Assembly (NCBI GenBank): GCA_021613535.1 | Contig: CP075497.1 | Location: 10,602,001 to 10,666,000, forward strand | DNA length: 64,000 bases | Direction of reading: 5' to 3' | Source: Adineta vaga | Taxonomy: Eukaryota; Animalia; Rotifera | Part shown: positions 32,377 through 35,300 of the stretch, in pieces | Position numbering within the stretch: the first letter of the stretch is position 1 | Layout: every line of letters starts with the position of its first letter | Program-made: the position numbers and the translations under genes | Notes under the pieces: generated by a model | Databases searched by the model: none | Told to the model about the DNA's origin: nothing | Seen by the model: the letters and a program-made list of their open reading frames with translations, nothing else

Positions 32377-35300
32377 ATGATGAAAACAACTAGTTTGACT
32401 AGAACACTTCTTAATCATCATGCTCAATCCCAACCAATTATCGGTGGTACACCTTCAACAAATTCCACATCATCATCATCTTCATCAGGATCTGATTTGG
32501 AAACAGTTTCATCCATATCACACGGTTCTTCGCGTCAAACAACAATAAATACACACGCTATAAATGTGAATGATCAAGGAAATTCTGTTGGACATGATGA
32601 ATCAGCTGTTGTTCTATTAAATACAATTGAAAGACTTAAACGTGAATTAGCAACAGTGAAACAAGCAAAAACACAATTAGAAACATTATACAAAGTAAGT
32701 TTGATTCGTAGAAATGACTGAAATAGTTTCTTTTCTTTTCCGAATTTTTTTGACAACAAAACTAATTGATTCTTATGTATGTGTTTTCAATTTGTACCAC
32801 CCTTCTTCTTCTTCTTCTTCTGTCTATTGATAAATACTAAACATCTATATGTATGCCATTGGATACAATCAAAAATGATTTATTTGATCGATTCGTTTTT
32901 TATTATTTAAATGAAAAAGGATGGTTTCGTGTATGTTTTTCTTTGCCTTCAGCAGGTGTACATACAACAAATAAATAAAATTTCACCTTGTGAAATTTAT
33001 GTTATTATTTCAATTTCAATAGTTTATTTGCCCTATTTTATTTTAGGCTAAATCTAAATCTGATCTTGATAAATCAGCTAAAATTACAAAACTTCGTCTA
33101 CAATATGAATATGAACTTAGTATTTTCTGTAAAGAAGATCAAAAAGATCTTGTCTCTTATTTACAGCGACAATTAATTTCACGAGATCAACGTATTGCTG
33201 AACAAAACTATGATATTGAACAATTAAAAACTTGGTCAGCACCAGATAGTCTTCGTGATTGTAATACAAATTTCAATAAGAAAATTGCACCAGTACAAAT
33301 ATTACGAAGCAGTGATCCTGATCTAGTTATTTCGACGGTAAGTGAGAAAAAAATGTTTATTTTTTCGTTTTTATATGCGTATGCGCATTCTTTGTTCTAT
33401 CCGCCATTACATCCGTGAGTTGCCTATGTACGTCCTCCTTCGCCAATTCTATTAGATATGAGTCATTGAAGTTAATGCCCTTGATTCATCTACGACTTCT
33501 TTTTCTCTAAGCTTGCCTCGCTCTTATTTTTTTTATTTTTTTCGTCCATTCGTATTTCGACAAACATATATATATATATTTGCGTATAATACACCTACTT
33601 TCTAAACATAAATCACAACTTAAATCTAATTTATCGACGTCAAATTAATGGCTGGAGACGACGCCAAACAGGGTGGTGGAAAATCCGGTAGTGGTGAATC
33701 AAAACCAGCCGATAAAGATAATAAAGCGAACAAAGGAGATGCAGCAGGCGGTGGTGCTGCTAAAGCTAGTGGTGATAAAGGTGGTGAAGCTAAATCAGGC
33801 GGTGGAGACAAAGGCGGCGCTAAAGGTGGTGAAGCTAAATCAGGCGGCGGAGATAAAGGTGGTGCCGCCAAATCTGGTGGTGGTGATAAAGGTGGGGAAG
33901 CTAAATCAGGCGGTGGAGACAAAGGCGGCGCTAAAGCTGGTGGTGATAGGTGGTGAAGCTAAATCAGGCGGCGGAGACAAAGGTGGCGCTAAAGCTGGTG
34001 GTGATAAAGGTGGTGAAGCTAAATCAGGCGGTGGAGATAAAGGTGGTGACGCCAAATCTGGTGGTGGAGATAAAGGCGGATCGAAAGCCGAAGCATCCGG
34101 TGGTGGAGAATGGGACGGTGGTGATCCAGAAAAAGGTGCAAAATTATTTAAAACAAAATGTGCACAATGTCATAGTGCGGAGCAAGGCGGTGGTAACAAA
34201 CAAGGACCCAATTTACATGGTTTATTTGGTCGAAGCACCGGTCAAGTTCCAGGCTTTAACTATAGTGAAGCGAATAAAAGTAAAAATATCACTTGGGGTG
34301 GTGATACTCTTTGGGTTTACTTAAAAGATCCAAAGAAATACATTCCTGGAACAAAGATGATTTTTGCTGGTTTGAAAAAAGAGGAAGAACGCAAAGATTT
34401 GATTGCTTATTTAAAACAACAATCCAGCGATTAAGAAAGAAAAATATCGCTTGTTTGATAGAGAATTTTTTCTCTCCTAATGAGATAAATTTCGTCTCAG
34501 TTACAATGTGAAATTTCTGTTCCTTTTGTGTTTTTCGTTTCCATTTATTCTAGCATGTTCTATTTCGAATCTGATAAAAGTGACTTCTTATTTTCGCGTC
34601 ATTAGTTGGTTTTTCTTAAAAATTTATATCAGCGTTTTGATAGTCTTACTTTTAAGTATAGAATATATGTTCTTTTCTATAATGTGTATATGCATACAAA
34701 AGATCATTTATCATAGATCGAACACAATGCGGATGTAATTGGTATTATCCATTTTTCACTTGATAAAAGTGAATTTTGTCAAGTGAAGGTTATTGATGAG
34801 TTCAGAAGCGGAAGAAGAATTGTGTTCTATAGGGATTTTCATTTTCCCTGTCTCTCTTTCTCTCTCTCTTTTGCTCGGTCTTTATATATTCTTCAAAATT
34901 GATTACATATCATTATTGATATTTTCTTTTGTTCGTCGAAAAATTAGAACCAACATCTTTATGATGAACAAAACCAAACATCACAACAAGACATTGTTGA
35001 ATTACATGATCGTGTAAAACGATTTGAACGTAAATTAGAAGTATTAAAACAGGATCAACCAGTAATATTTCAAAGACAAAAAAAACGAACTCAATGAAAT
35101 CTAAATGATTGTTATCTCTTTAGAAAGATCACGATAAAGAATTAATTAAACGAGCTTTAGCGAAACAAGCTAGTAAAGATGCTATCGAATATCAAAAACT
35201 ATTGAAGAAAAAAAATGATGAAATCAGACAATTGAGTCTTCAATTGGAAGAATTATCTAAAGTAATTGGAAAACGTTGAATAGAATATAGATTTGAACTC

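What the first reader, a model, noticed from the sequence alone, without database searches (positions are those of the whole stretch)
33648..34434. Cytochrome c fused to a ~158-aa Gly/Lys/Asp/Ala tandem-repeat tail
Seen: an intact cytochrome c domain (CAQCH, Met80 region PGTKMIFAG) preceded by [18 protein letters not shown]... and more than 10 GGDKGG(E/A/D)AKSG-type units; repaired length ~262 aa. Synonymous variation among units suggests selection at the protein level. Known: mitochondrial cytochromes c are ~104-112 aa with at most short N-terminal extensions. Inference: a disordered, charge-alternating, hydrophilin-like tail could tether the protein, protect it during desiccation, or alter its release and apoptosome function. 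It could be a novel specialised paralogue.
Basis: partly seen in the sequence, partly recalled or inferred. Interest (0 to 1): 0.85.

Follow-up and report, generated by a model that had tools for sequence, protein, structure and literature searches.

The report
Bdelloid cytochrome c with disordered tail
Bdelloid rotifers keep, next to a normal cytochrome c, a second transcribed copy whose otherwise standard haem domain carries a 100-250-residue floppy glycine/lysine/aspartate-rich N-terminal tail, which I found described nowhere for this normally length-invariant respiratory protein.

Summary
Window 33648-34434 (+) encodes MAGDDAKQ..., 11 DKGG-type units and a complete mitochondrial-type cytochrome c domain ([14 protein letters not shown]), 262 codons in all. 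The frame is broken once: two bases are missing at 33947/33948. This is probably an assembly error. The only public contig that crosses the site (an RNA-like run) has the two extra A's, and no run supports the window's version.

The gene is real. Three RNA-like runs cover only about 33527-34685, including the ATG and the repeat. There is no upstream ATG and no internal Met.

The genome has one other copy, a canonical 110-aa cytochrome c on contig 3. It is nested in the same intron of the duplicated host gene.

Intact extended copies (101-247 residues before Gly1) occur in Adineta ricciae, Rotaria sp. Silwood1, Didymodactylos carnosus and about 15 metagenome contigs.
- Domain dN/dS is 0.04-0.10.
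- dN/dS of the first 45 tail codons is about 0.23.
- Tail composition is conserved: Gly 20-50%, Lys 11-23%, under 2% hydrophobic in all but one copy, net charge +1 to +8, alternating charges.
- The tail is predicted disordered.

Function is untested. My best guess is a permanently attached hydrophilin-like brush on an intermembrane-space electron carrier. A flexible tether and a tolerated neutral expansion are the main rivals. I found no literature on it.

The parts
33377..33386 (+). GC-rich near-palindrome GCGTATGCGC in the host intron about 265 nt upstream of the ATG; a candidate promoter element of the nested cytochrome c gene
   Evidence: It occurs once in the window against 0.01 expected. 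It lies in a block conserved between the extended and short copies and across species. The promoter role is inference; the resemblance to the NRF-1 site is from memory.
33527..33647 (+). minimum 5' untranslated region, with no ATG in it
   Evidence: Contigs of the RNA-like runs begin at 33527, 33558 and 33566 and run into the coding region. The sequence was read.
33648..33740 (+). start codon and conserved N-terminal module of the tail (codons 1-31, [13 protein letters not shown]...[13 protein letters not shown])
   Evidence: The module is alignable in all Adineta- and Rotaria-type orthologues. dN/dS over the first 45 codons is 0.11-0.51, median 0.23. The start codon is homologous to that of the short copies.
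33741..34119 (+). Gly/Lys/Asp/Ala low-complexity tail with the tandem array (about 33750-34076) and the conserved junction ...[13 protein letters not shown]
   Evidence: It is predicted disordered in the orthologue model (pLDDT 35-54, no secondary structure). Pfam gives no match.
33947..33948 (+). frame break: two bases missing ('gat a ggt' instead of 'gat aaa ggt')
   Evidence: The contig of run X10 has AA put in behind 33947 (depth 37.6 of 37.6). No contig of X1, X15 or X17 crosses the site.
34120..34431 (+). cytochrome c domain, Gly1- to residue-104-equivalent
   Evidence: Pfam PF00034 scores 55.4 bits. It is colinear with solved cytochromes c. dN/dS is 0.04-0.10.
34159..34173 (+). CAQCH haem-attachment motif, preceded by Phe and three residues (F-KTK-C)
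   Evidence: Sequence read. The HCCS recognition features are taken from PMC4158909.
34357..34359 (+). Met80-equivalent axial ligand within PGTKMIFAG
34432..34434 (+). TAA stop codon
   Evidence: The stop is kept in the 4-nt shorter 3'UTR variant seen in the RNA-like runs.
34435..34685 (+). minimum 3' untranslated region
   Evidence: RNA-like contigs end at about 34535, 34586 and 34685.
33047..33340 (+). upstream exon of the host coiled-coil (RIM-binding-protein-like) gene whose intron holds the cytochrome c gene
   Evidence: Translation. It is conserved about 300 nt upstream of cytochrome c in L002, L004, L005, L006, L008 and L009. It has no depth in the RNA-like runs.
34948..35092 (+). downstream exon of the same host gene (approximate bounds)
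   Evidence: Frame 3 translation matches the L002 ORF at 804-956. There is a weak RIMB1_N hit on the equivalent part of P0290.

Best explanation
SHOWN. This is a genuine, intronless, transcribed paralogue of mitochondrial cytochrome c. It is nested in an intron of a coiled-coil gene in a genome that looks like that of a bdelloid rotifer. The genome holds exactly two cytochrome c genes, which sit in duplicated (ohnologous) copies of the same host intron: a canonical 110-aa copy on contig 3 and this extended copy on contig 6. The tail grew by in-frame expansion between about codon 8 and the GGEW junction of an ancestrally short Gly/Lys/Asp/Ala N-terminus. The extended copy is kept intact in Adineta and Rotaria, and Didymodactylos has an analogous one. 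The haem domain is under strong purifying selection. The first ~31 tail residues and the junction are conserved. The middle of the tail varies freely in length and sequence but not in composition.

INFERRED. The single frame break in the window is an assembly error. The whole product (about 25 kDa) is imported into the intermembrane space and receives haem from HCCS, whose recognition features (Phe, three residues, CXXCH) are intact. The tail stays attached.

MOST LIKELY MECHANISM. The tail acts through bulk physical properties rather than a fold. It is a hydrated, non-collapsing, weakly basic polyampholyte coil with an estimated Rg of about 4 nm, against about 1.3 nm for the domain. It would work as a cis-attached hydrophilin or entropic brush: keeping the carrier soluble and spaced from neighbours as water is lost, and making it bulkier and so harder to lose from damaged mitochondria on rehydration. 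The overall pI stays near 9.2, so docking electrostatics would be preserved.

The gene-level claims are about 0.9 likely. The mechanism is about 0.3 likely.
For: - Gene and domain.
- Two copies only, and a canonical ohnologue nested in the same host intron.
- Transcription: three RNA-like runs from three studies cover only about 33527-34685, with zero depth on the flanks and host exons. Their contigs span the 5'UTR, the ATG and the repeat, and show no joints.
- No upstream ATG. No internal Met in 17 of 18 tails.
- Frame: the X10 contig restores AA at 33947, and no run supports the deletion. An allelic 6-nt variant is in frame and charge-neutral.
- Orthologues with intact frames: P0001-P0007, P0122, L010-L019, A. 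ricciae P0121, Rotaria sp. Silwood1 P0210/P0211/P0289 (in-frame repeat-number variants) and D. carnosus P0290.
- The 18 Adineta and Rotaria extended copies fall on one side of a branch (support 91/88).
- Selection: domain omega 0.04-0.10 at dS 0.8-1.9. Tail N-terminus omega median 0.23. Unit variation is at third codon positions.
- Physical character: Gly 20-50%, Lys 11-23%, hydrophobic residues under 2% in 16 of 17 tails (6.2% in P0003), net charge +1 to +8, GRAVY -1.0 to -1.9. Charge signs alternate beyond chance (z about 2-4.6 in 14 of 16 tails, 0.5 and 1.3 in P0007 and P0003). pI is unchanged. The AF2 tail has pLDDT 35-54 with no secondary structure, against a domain pLDDT of mostly 86-95.
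- Homologous start codons and equal exon-to-ATG spacing.
- An HCCS gene is present, and the HCCS recognition determinants are present.
- An engineered yeast Cyc1 with a long N-terminal addition is still hemylated and supports respiration (PMC7474732).
Against: - There is no protein-level, localisation or expression-level evidence. Contigs cannot give RNA levels or exact ends.
- The frame repair rests on one 61-nt contig in one run. The break could be real in the assembled haplotype.
- Nothing links the gene to desiccation. The supplements of an A. vaga desiccation transcriptome paper do not mention cytochrome c.
- I could not establish presence or absence in non-desiccating Rotaria. Only short copies turned up for R. 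socialis and R. magnacalcarata, which may simply reflect gene models.
- Extreme length variation and recurrent expansion also fit weak or absent constraint on the middle of the tail.
- The D. carnosus extended copy groups with its own short copy (99/94; AU p 0.05 for a single extended clade). The trait is therefore either convergent or homogenised by gene conversion.
Confidence: 0.45

Rival explanations
1. Flexible tether, working like bacterial cytochrome cy. The conserved ~31-residue N-terminal module docks to a partner (a respiratory complex, a cristae protein or cardiolipin headgroups). The variable Gly-rich middle is a leash that keeps the haem domain shuttling locally between complexes III and IV.
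For: The architecture is conserved end, variable-length linker, conserved junction, then domain. Linker length is free to vary from 101 to 247 residues, as expected for a leash. Membrane-anchored cytochrome cy uses a flexible linker (PMC7876108). Tethered yeast cytochrome c respires (PMC7474732). The tail has a slight net positive charge.
Against: There is no hydrophobic or transmembrane segment and no lipidation motif: residue 2 is Ala, Pro or Ser, not Gly. The N-terminal module is as hydrophilic as the rest of the tail. No partner is known. The D. carnosus tail has a different N-terminus.
Confidence: 0.2
2. Tolerated, essentially neutral repeat expansion. The N-terminus of cytochrome c is exposed, so a slippage-prone Gly/Lys/Asp tract has ballooned in one redundant duplicate. 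Selection acts only against frameshifts, hydrophobic residues and charge imbalance.
For: Length and sequence vary greatly, even between alleles (506, 532 and 560-aa Rotaria models; 235 against 295 aa in L011 and L010). The units are recent and highly similar. A redundant canonical copy exists. Short copies also carry mini-tracts, as in P0008 and P0014. A similar expansion may have arisen twice.
Against: The tail persists at 100 residues or more in every extended copy across genera at dS of about 1 or above. None has collapsed back to short. The N-terminal module and junction are under purifying selection. Composition and charge alternation are conserved although the repeat units differ.
Confidence: 0.15
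3. The tail is a pro-region or import regulator. It delays or gates import and haem attachment, or holds a cytosolic pool. It is clipped near the conserved [11 protein letters not shown] junction to release a normal-sized cytochrome c.
For: The junction motif is strongly conserved in Adineta and Rotaria. There is no internal Met, so a short form can only arise by proteolysis.
Against: SKAEAS is part of the repeated unit in Rotaria, so it is not a unique site. The tail has 13-18% acidic residues and no amphipathic, Arg-rich character, unlike known presequences. No protease or precedent is known for cytochrome c.
Confidence: 0.1
4. In this animal the gene is a fresh pseudogene, at least on the assembled haplotype. 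The 2-nt deletion is real, and translation from the first ATG ends after 102 residues without a haem domain.
For: The window as given is out of frame. Only one contig in one run shows the repaired form.
Against: No contig in any of four runs, including a DNA run at depth of about 150, carries the deleted junction, although it would give unique words. The domain downstream shows no other defect. Every orthologue is intact.
Confidence: 0.1

Closest known systems
Canonical mitochondrial cytochrome c (class I c-type, Pfam PF00034; e.g. horse or bovine CYCS, yeast Cyc1)
   Same: The domain is colinear over 102 residues without indels. It has CXXCH, Phe plus three-residue spacing, the Met80 loop PGTKMIFAG, the Lys72/73/86/87-equivalents, a basic pI and strong purifying selection.
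   Different: It carries 101-247 extra N-terminal residues, against 0-8 in known animal, plant and fungal proteins. The product is about 22-34 kDa instead of about 12 kDa.
Membrane-anchored cytochrome cy of Rhodobacter and related bacteria, and the engineered yeast Cyc1-MA
   Same: A cytochrome c head on a long, flexible, low-complexity N-terminal linker. The engineered version shows that such N-terminal additions are compatible with hemylation and respiration.
   Different: cy and Cyc1-MA have a transmembrane anchor. The rotifer tail has no hydrophobic stretch at all. The linker chemistry also differs: Ala/Pro/Glu-rich in bacteria, against Gly/Lys/Asp-rich here (compare P0009 and P0345).
Hydrophilins, LEA proteins and other desiccation-linked disordered proteins (including mitochondrial LEAs of Artemia and plants, and tardigrade MAHS)
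   Same: Very high Gly content, extreme hydrophilicity, predicted disorder, and occurrence in an anhydrobiotic animal. The A. vaga unit happens to be an 11-mer.
   Different: There is no sequence or Pfam relation. It is fused in cis to an enzyme-like client rather than being a free protein. The 11-mer period is not conserved in orthologues. No stress induction has been shown.
Specialised cytochrome c paralogues (mammalian testis Cyct, Drosophila cyt-c-d, Plasmodium cyt c-2)
   Same: A lineage-specific second copy with its own diagnostic substitutions: S/T-A-E-K-G/D-G-G after CXXCH, NLH for NLN, and a QQSSD end.
   Different: Those paralogues differ by substitutions or short extensions. None is known to carry a 100+ residue disordered domain. 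This last statement rests on my own knowledge and on the blank literature searches.

Membership tests
Mitochondrial class I cytochrome c (PF00034) | CXXCH haem-attachment motif | tested here: met
   CAQCH at 34159-34173.
Mitochondrial class I cytochrome c (PF00034) | Met80 axial ligand in the PGTKM(I/V)F loop, and full-length colinearity with solved structures | tested here: met
   PGTKMIFAG is present. phmmer aligns query residues 5-106 to residues 1-102 of 2b4z without gaps, E 2e-47.
Mitochondrial class I cytochrome c (PF00034) | Profile score above the curated cut-off | tested here: met
   55.4 bits against a cut-off of 21.3.
Mitochondrial class I cytochrome c (PF00034) | HCCS substrate features: aromatic residue three residues before CXXCH, and His of the motif | tested here: met
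   F-KTK-CAQCH. Criteria from PMC4158909. An HCCS gene is in the genome.
Mitochondrial class I cytochrome c (PF00034) | Size of about 104-113 residues with at most a short N-terminal extension | tested here: not met
   262 codons, with 158 before Gly1. Orthologues have 101-247.
Mitochondrial class I cytochrome c (PF00034) | Covalent haem, intermembrane-space location, electron transfer between complexes III and IV | not testable with these tools
   Needs haem staining, fractionation and activity assays.
Hydrophilins (compositional class: Gly above 6%, high hydrophilicity) | Gly content and mean hydropathy of the tail | tested here: met
   Gly 40% and GRAVY -1.23 in the window tail. Orthologues have Gly 20-50% and GRAVY -1.0 to -1.9. 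The class is defined on whole proteins, so this applies to the tail only.
Hydrophilins (compositional class: Gly above 6%, high hydrophilicity) | Accumulation under water deficit | not tested
   No quantitative RNA or protein data. Nothing was found in the supplements of PMC10809525.
LEA group 3 (LEA_4) and other curated LEA families | Profile match, or a conserved 11-mer that can form an amphipathic helix | tested here: not met
   Pfam gives no hit on four tails. Units have 5-6 Gly in 11 residues. The period differs between species.
Membrane-anchored cytochrome cy type | N-terminal transmembrane anchor | tested here: not met
   Hydrophobic residues are under 2% of the tail in 16 of 17 copies (6.2% in P0003), with no hydrophobic run.
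Membrane-anchored cytochrome cy type | Long flexible linker preceding a cytochrome c domain | tested here: met
Cleavable mitochondrial presequence | Arg-rich amphipathic helix, nearly devoid of acidic residues | tested here: not met
   Asp plus Glu are 13-18% of the tail in 16 of 17 copies (10% in P0003). Arg is essentially absent. No helix is predicted.

The most novel reading that the evidence does not exclude
Bdelloid rotifers have fused a desiccation-type disordered protectant directly onto cytochrome c. This would create a bulky, brush-bearing electron carrier that stays soluble, functional and retained in the intermembrane space through drying and rehydration, and so limits cytochrome c loss and death signalling. 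It would be a natural exception to the rule that eukaryotes use only a small, free cytochrome c, and the first cis-acting hydrophilin on a respiratory-chain component.
Probability: 0.3. Interest if true: 0.85.

Novelty: new variant of a known kind. Interest (0 to 1): 0.68.

Why it matters
Cytochrome c is the textbook case of a protein with fixed size and shape. One paper read here even states that eukaryotes express only soluble, free forms (PMC7474732). A copy with a 100-250-residue disordered tail, maintained by selection in at least three bdelloid genera of three families, shows that the carrier tolerates a large appendage and perhaps benefits from it.

It offers a natural system for three questions:
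- How size, diffusion and tethering of cytochrome c affect respiration and release.
- How HCCS and the outer-membrane pore handle long hydrophilic N-termini.
- Whether disordered protectants can act in cis inside mitochondria of anhydrobiotic animals.

There are also two practical points. Public gene models fuse this gene to its host gene. The reference assembly probably carries a 2-nt error in it.

Tried and rejected
1. AlphaFold2 on the 7-sequence alignment gave pLDDT 41 even for the haem domain, so it was uninformative. I repeated it with 107 sequences.
2. Pfam on four tails gave no family. The ESM Atlas feature search on the tail gave no usable hit.
3. Searching the tail against the window's own genome found only itself, so there is no family of such tails in this genome at that sensitivity.
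4. Four literature searches and a supplement search of an A. vaga desiccation/radiation transcriptome paper found no mention of an extended cytochrome c.
5. Earlier notes of this scan held only the same finding.
6. The alternative reading frame across the repeat (a 253-aa ORF from GTG 33673, or from ATG 33739, giving a hydrophobic V/K/L-rich leader joined to the domain) was considered and rejected. All orthologues keep the Gly/Lys/Asp frame from a homologous ATG, and the RNA contig restores that frame. The antisense 98-aa ORF is a low-complexity artefact.
7. A host-gene/cytochrome c fusion protein, as in the NCBI models P0121, P0123-P0125, P0210 and P0290, was rejected for the window. There is no joint, the host exons have no depth in the RNA-like runs, and there is no AG acceptor in the last ~60 nt before the ATG.
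8. The exhaustive profile search collapsed all bdelloid extended copies into one representative. Otherwise it returned bacterial multi-domain cytochromes, plus one unknown 206-aa eukaryote-type protein.
9. No complex prediction was run, because no binding partner is claimed.
10. The broken frame was never joined with real letters. The two pieces were searched apart by reference, and scripts used X or NN at the break.
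Full report
**What is in the window**

The + strand from 33648 reads ATG GCT GGA GAC GAC..., giving [18 protein letters not shown].... This is followed by Gly/Lys/Asp/Ala units, then [22 protein letters not shown]...PGTKMIFAG...SSD and a TAA stop at 34432-34434.

Tandem Repeats Finder reports an array at about 33750-34076. It has periods of 15, 33, 58 and 118 nt and 87-89% matches at the long periods.

The frame is broken once. 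At 33947/33948 the window has 'gat a ggt' where every other unit has 'gat aaa ggt'. As a result the ORF list shows a 102-aa ORF from the ATG and a separate open frame holding the haem domain. With one X at the break, the product is 262 residues and about 25.1 kDa, with 158 residues before the Gly1-equivalent.

The domain scores 55.4 bits against PF00034 (cut-off 21.3). It aligns without gaps to residues 1-102 of solved bovine/horse cytochrome c, with E 2e-47.

**Where it sits**

The window is G000:C6:10602001-10666000, in a 100.8-Mb genome of six contigs with about 30% GC. From the best-matching named proteins (Adineta ricciae, Rotaria, Didymodactylos), the organism is a bdelloid rotifer of the Adineta type. 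The species name is my inference.

The gene has no intron. It lies on the same strand inside an intron of a coiled-coil gene, whose exons are at about 33047-33340 and 34948-35092. That host gene is weakly RIM-binding-protein-like.

The genome has exactly one other cytochrome c match. It is on contig 3 and encodes a canonical 110-aa protein beginning MGNEWEGGD. It is nested in the equivalent intron of the duplicated host gene. The two are therefore duplicates of a whole segment (ohnologues), one short and one extended.

**Is it expressed, and is the break real?**

I laid four public runs on 32800-35300. The DNA run covers the whole stretch. Three RNA-like runs from three different studies cover only about 33527-34685 and have zero depth on the flanks and host exons. 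Their contigs run from the 5'UTR (33527, 33558 and 33566) through the ATG into the repeat. There are no joints, and the only loose end in the RNA-like runs is a short T-run, so nothing suggests a leader spliced on downstream of the repeat.

There is no ATG between 33527 and 33647 and no internal Met in the tail. The tail is therefore an obligatory part of the primary product.

At the break, the only contig that bridges it (run X10, 61 nt, depth 37.6) has AA inserted behind 33947, which restores GAT AAA GGT. In the other three runs, contigs stop a few bases short of the site or begin at or just after it, and none carries the window's junction. That junction would give unique words if it existed.

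I read this as an assembly error in a tandem repeat, at about 85% likelihood. It rests on one contig. Logan contigs cannot give RNA levels or exact ends.

All four runs also show a 6-nt shorter in-frame variant at 33786-33791 (GGEAKS to GAAS, losing one acidic and one basic residue). The RNA-like runs show a 4-nt shorter 3'UTR variant that keeps the stop codon.

**Relatives**

A word-indexed search with the 161-aa piece found intact extended proteins of 205-251 aa (P0001-P0007) from metagenome assemblies. It also found short bdelloid copies (P0008, P0010, P0012 and D. carnosus P0014).

Searching with their alignment, and then with the A. ricciae protein, added named species:
- Adineta ricciae P0121.
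- Rotaria sp. Silwood1 P0210, P0211 and P0289. These are models of 532, 506 and 560 aa that differ by whole repeat units, in frame.
- Didymodactylos carnosus P0126 and P0290.

The NCBI models fuse host exons to the cytochrome c ORF. The cytochrome c part starts at its own Met (MAGDEAKQ, MAGDETKQ, MSGSTEKAD).

A JGI metagenome scan gave further loci, L010-L019, all with open frames. L010 and L011 come from near-identical sequences, with 187 against 127 tail residues.

The host exon lies about 300 nt upstream in L004, L005, L006, L008 and L009, so the nesting is conserved. L008 (extended) and L009 (short, 122 aa) come from one assembly.

Tails range from 101 to 247 residues before Gly1. An exhaustive profile search of 1.84 billion representatives found no further tail-bearing group. 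All bdelloid copies collapse into one representative. The other long hits that I inspected are bacterial multi-domain cytochromes (the remainder look the same from their length and number of matched stretches). There is also one unknown 206-aa eukaryote-type protein with a different hydrophilic extension.

**Evolution**

On the 104-residue domain, all bdelloid copies form a clade (100/99). The 18 Adineta and Rotaria extended copies fall on one side of a branch (91/88). This places that paralogue before the split of those genera.

The D. carnosus extended copy pairs with its own short copy (99/94). Forcing all extended copies together costs 13.2 lnL (AU p 0.05). The Didymodactylos tail is therefore either an independent expansion or the two copies have been homogenised.

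The start codons of short and extended copies align, and the distance from host exon to ATG is 308 against 313 nt. P0008 begins MGGEDAKKAGGAGGEW, resembling the two ends of the long tail. The tail thus arose by in-frame expansion inside a short ancestral Gly/Lys/Asp/Ala N-terminus, not by capture of the 5'UTR.

**Selection**

- Domain: dN/dS between the window and orthologues is 0.04-0.10, at dS 0.8-1.9.
- Tail, first 45 codons: 0.11-0.51, median 0.23.
- Repeat units within the window: among seven 11-codon units, variable columns fall 0/1/8 on codon positions 1/2/3.

The middle of the tail cannot be aligned between species. Its make-up is nevertheless conserved:
- Gly 20-50% and Lys 11-23%.
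- Asp plus Glu 13-18% in 16 of 17 tails (10% in P0003).
- Hydrophobic residues under 2% in 16 of 17 tails (6.2% in P0003).
- Net charge always +1 to +8.
- GRAVY -1.0 to -1.9.

Successive charges alternate in sign far more than in shuffles: 0.67-0.87 against 0.50, with z about 2-4.6, in 14 of 16 tails. The two weakest, P0007 and P0003, reach only z 0.5 and 1.3. Whole-protein pI stays at about 9.2, the same as the short copy.

With a 107-sequence alignment, AlphaFold2 models the domain at a pLDDT of mostly 86-95 with the usual helices. The whole tail has pLDDT 35-54 and no secondary structure.

**How it probably works**

Shown: a transcribed, conserved gene whose domain keeps every feature needed for haem attachment and electron transfer, and whose tail is a conserved-composition, disordered polyampholyte.

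From established knowledge:
- HCCS recognises the Phe three residues before CXXCH, plus the His of the motif (PMC4158909). Both are present (F-KTK-CAQCH), and the genome has an HCCS gene.
- HCCS also matures cytochrome c1, whose motif lies far from the N-terminus (abstract of PMC11727520).
- Yeast Cyc1 carrying a long N-terminal anchor plus linker is hemylated, somewhat less efficiently, and supports respiration (PMC7474732).

So an N-terminal tail need not block biogenesis or function.

Inference: the tail stays on. Being well-mixed in charge and Gly-rich, it forms an expanded hydrated coil. Random-coil scaling recalled from memory gives an Rg of about 4 nm for 158 residues. I think it most likely acts as a cis-attached hydrophilin or brush that keeps the carrier soluble and retained through drying and rehydration. 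I put this at about 0.3.

A cytochrome-cy-like leash anchored by the conserved first ~31 residues is the next best reading, at about 0.2. It is weakened by the complete lack of a hydrophobic anchor. The other rivals are a tolerated neutral expansion (about 0.15), a clipped pro-region (about 0.1) and a truly broken allele (about 0.1).

**Comparison and novelty**

By every sequence criterion the domain is a member of the mitochondrial cytochrome c family. The one defining feature it fails is size.

The tail belongs to no curated family. It meets only the compositional definition of hydrophilins.

I found no paper describing it. One paper states that eukaryotes express only soluble free cytochrome c.

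I rate it a new variant of a known kind: a lineage-wide, selected, disordered appendage on a protein famous for its constant length.

**Limits**

There are no protein, localisation or quantitative expression data. The repair of the frame rests on one contig. I could not settle whether non-desiccating Rotaria have the extended copy; only short copies appeared for R. socialis and R. magnacalcarata, which may reflect gene models. Taxon labels for the metagenome contigs are unknown.

The two pieces of the broken frame were always searched apart by reference. Scripts used X or NN at the break.

Noticed in passing
window 33047-33340 and 34948-35092; L002; P0121, P0123-P0125, P0210, P0290: The cytochrome c gene is nested, on the same strand, in an intron of a coiled-coil gene that is weakly RIM-binding-protein-like. 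The nesting is conserved in both ohnologues and in Adineta, Rotaria and Didymodactylos. Public NCBI gene models wrongly fuse host exons with the cytochrome c ORF.
   Followed up: partly
window 33377-33450: Non-coding blocks in the host intron are conserved between extended and short copies and between species: GCGTATGCGC (unique in the window), CCGCCAT, GTTGCC and TCCTCC. They are probably a shared cytochrome c promoter. The first resembles the NRF-1 palindrome of vertebrate cytochrome c promoters (from memory, not tested).
   Followed up: partly
window 33786-33791, 33565 and 34433: Variants in public runs: a 6-nt shorter in-frame form (GGEAKS to GAAS) in all four runs; an extra AT in the (AT)n run at 33565 in one run; and a 4-nt shorter 3'UTR form that keeps the TAA, seen in the RNA-like runs but not in the DNA run laid.
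   Followed up: no
window 33673-34434 (+, frame 2) and 33626-33922 (-): The repeat is also open in a second sense frame (253 aa, V/K/L-rich) and on the antisense strand (98 aa, [10 protein letters not shown]-like). Both are low-complexity artefacts that could mislead gene callers.
   Followed up: yes
P0231 (Scylla paramamosain, 259 aa) and P0183 (Penaeus vannamei, 347 aa): Decapod crustacean models show a hydrophobic segment plus a Pro-rich linker in front of a mitochondrial-type cytochrome c domain. P0231 has no Met at the usual start. If real, this would be a membrane-anchored eukaryotic cytochrome c.
   Followed up: no
L029 (P0385, 206 aa; ENA ERZ27288962, an 821-nt contig): An unknown eukaryote-type cytochrome c with a different hydrophilic, charged N-terminal extension of about 100 residues, rich in Glu, Lys, Asp, Ser and Pro. 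It is a single contig with no taxon.
   Followed up: partly
G000:C6:2423470-2424278 (-): A holocytochrome c synthase (Cyto_heme_lyase, PF01265) gene. Only one locus was found by the six-frame search.
   Followed up: no
P0014 and P0290 (Didymodactylos carnosus): Both D. carnosus copies carry the same kind of DAKP(D/E)AKKS tract, 28 against 163 residues, and their domains are each other's closest relatives. This suggests gene conversion between copies or an independent expansion.
   Followed up: partly
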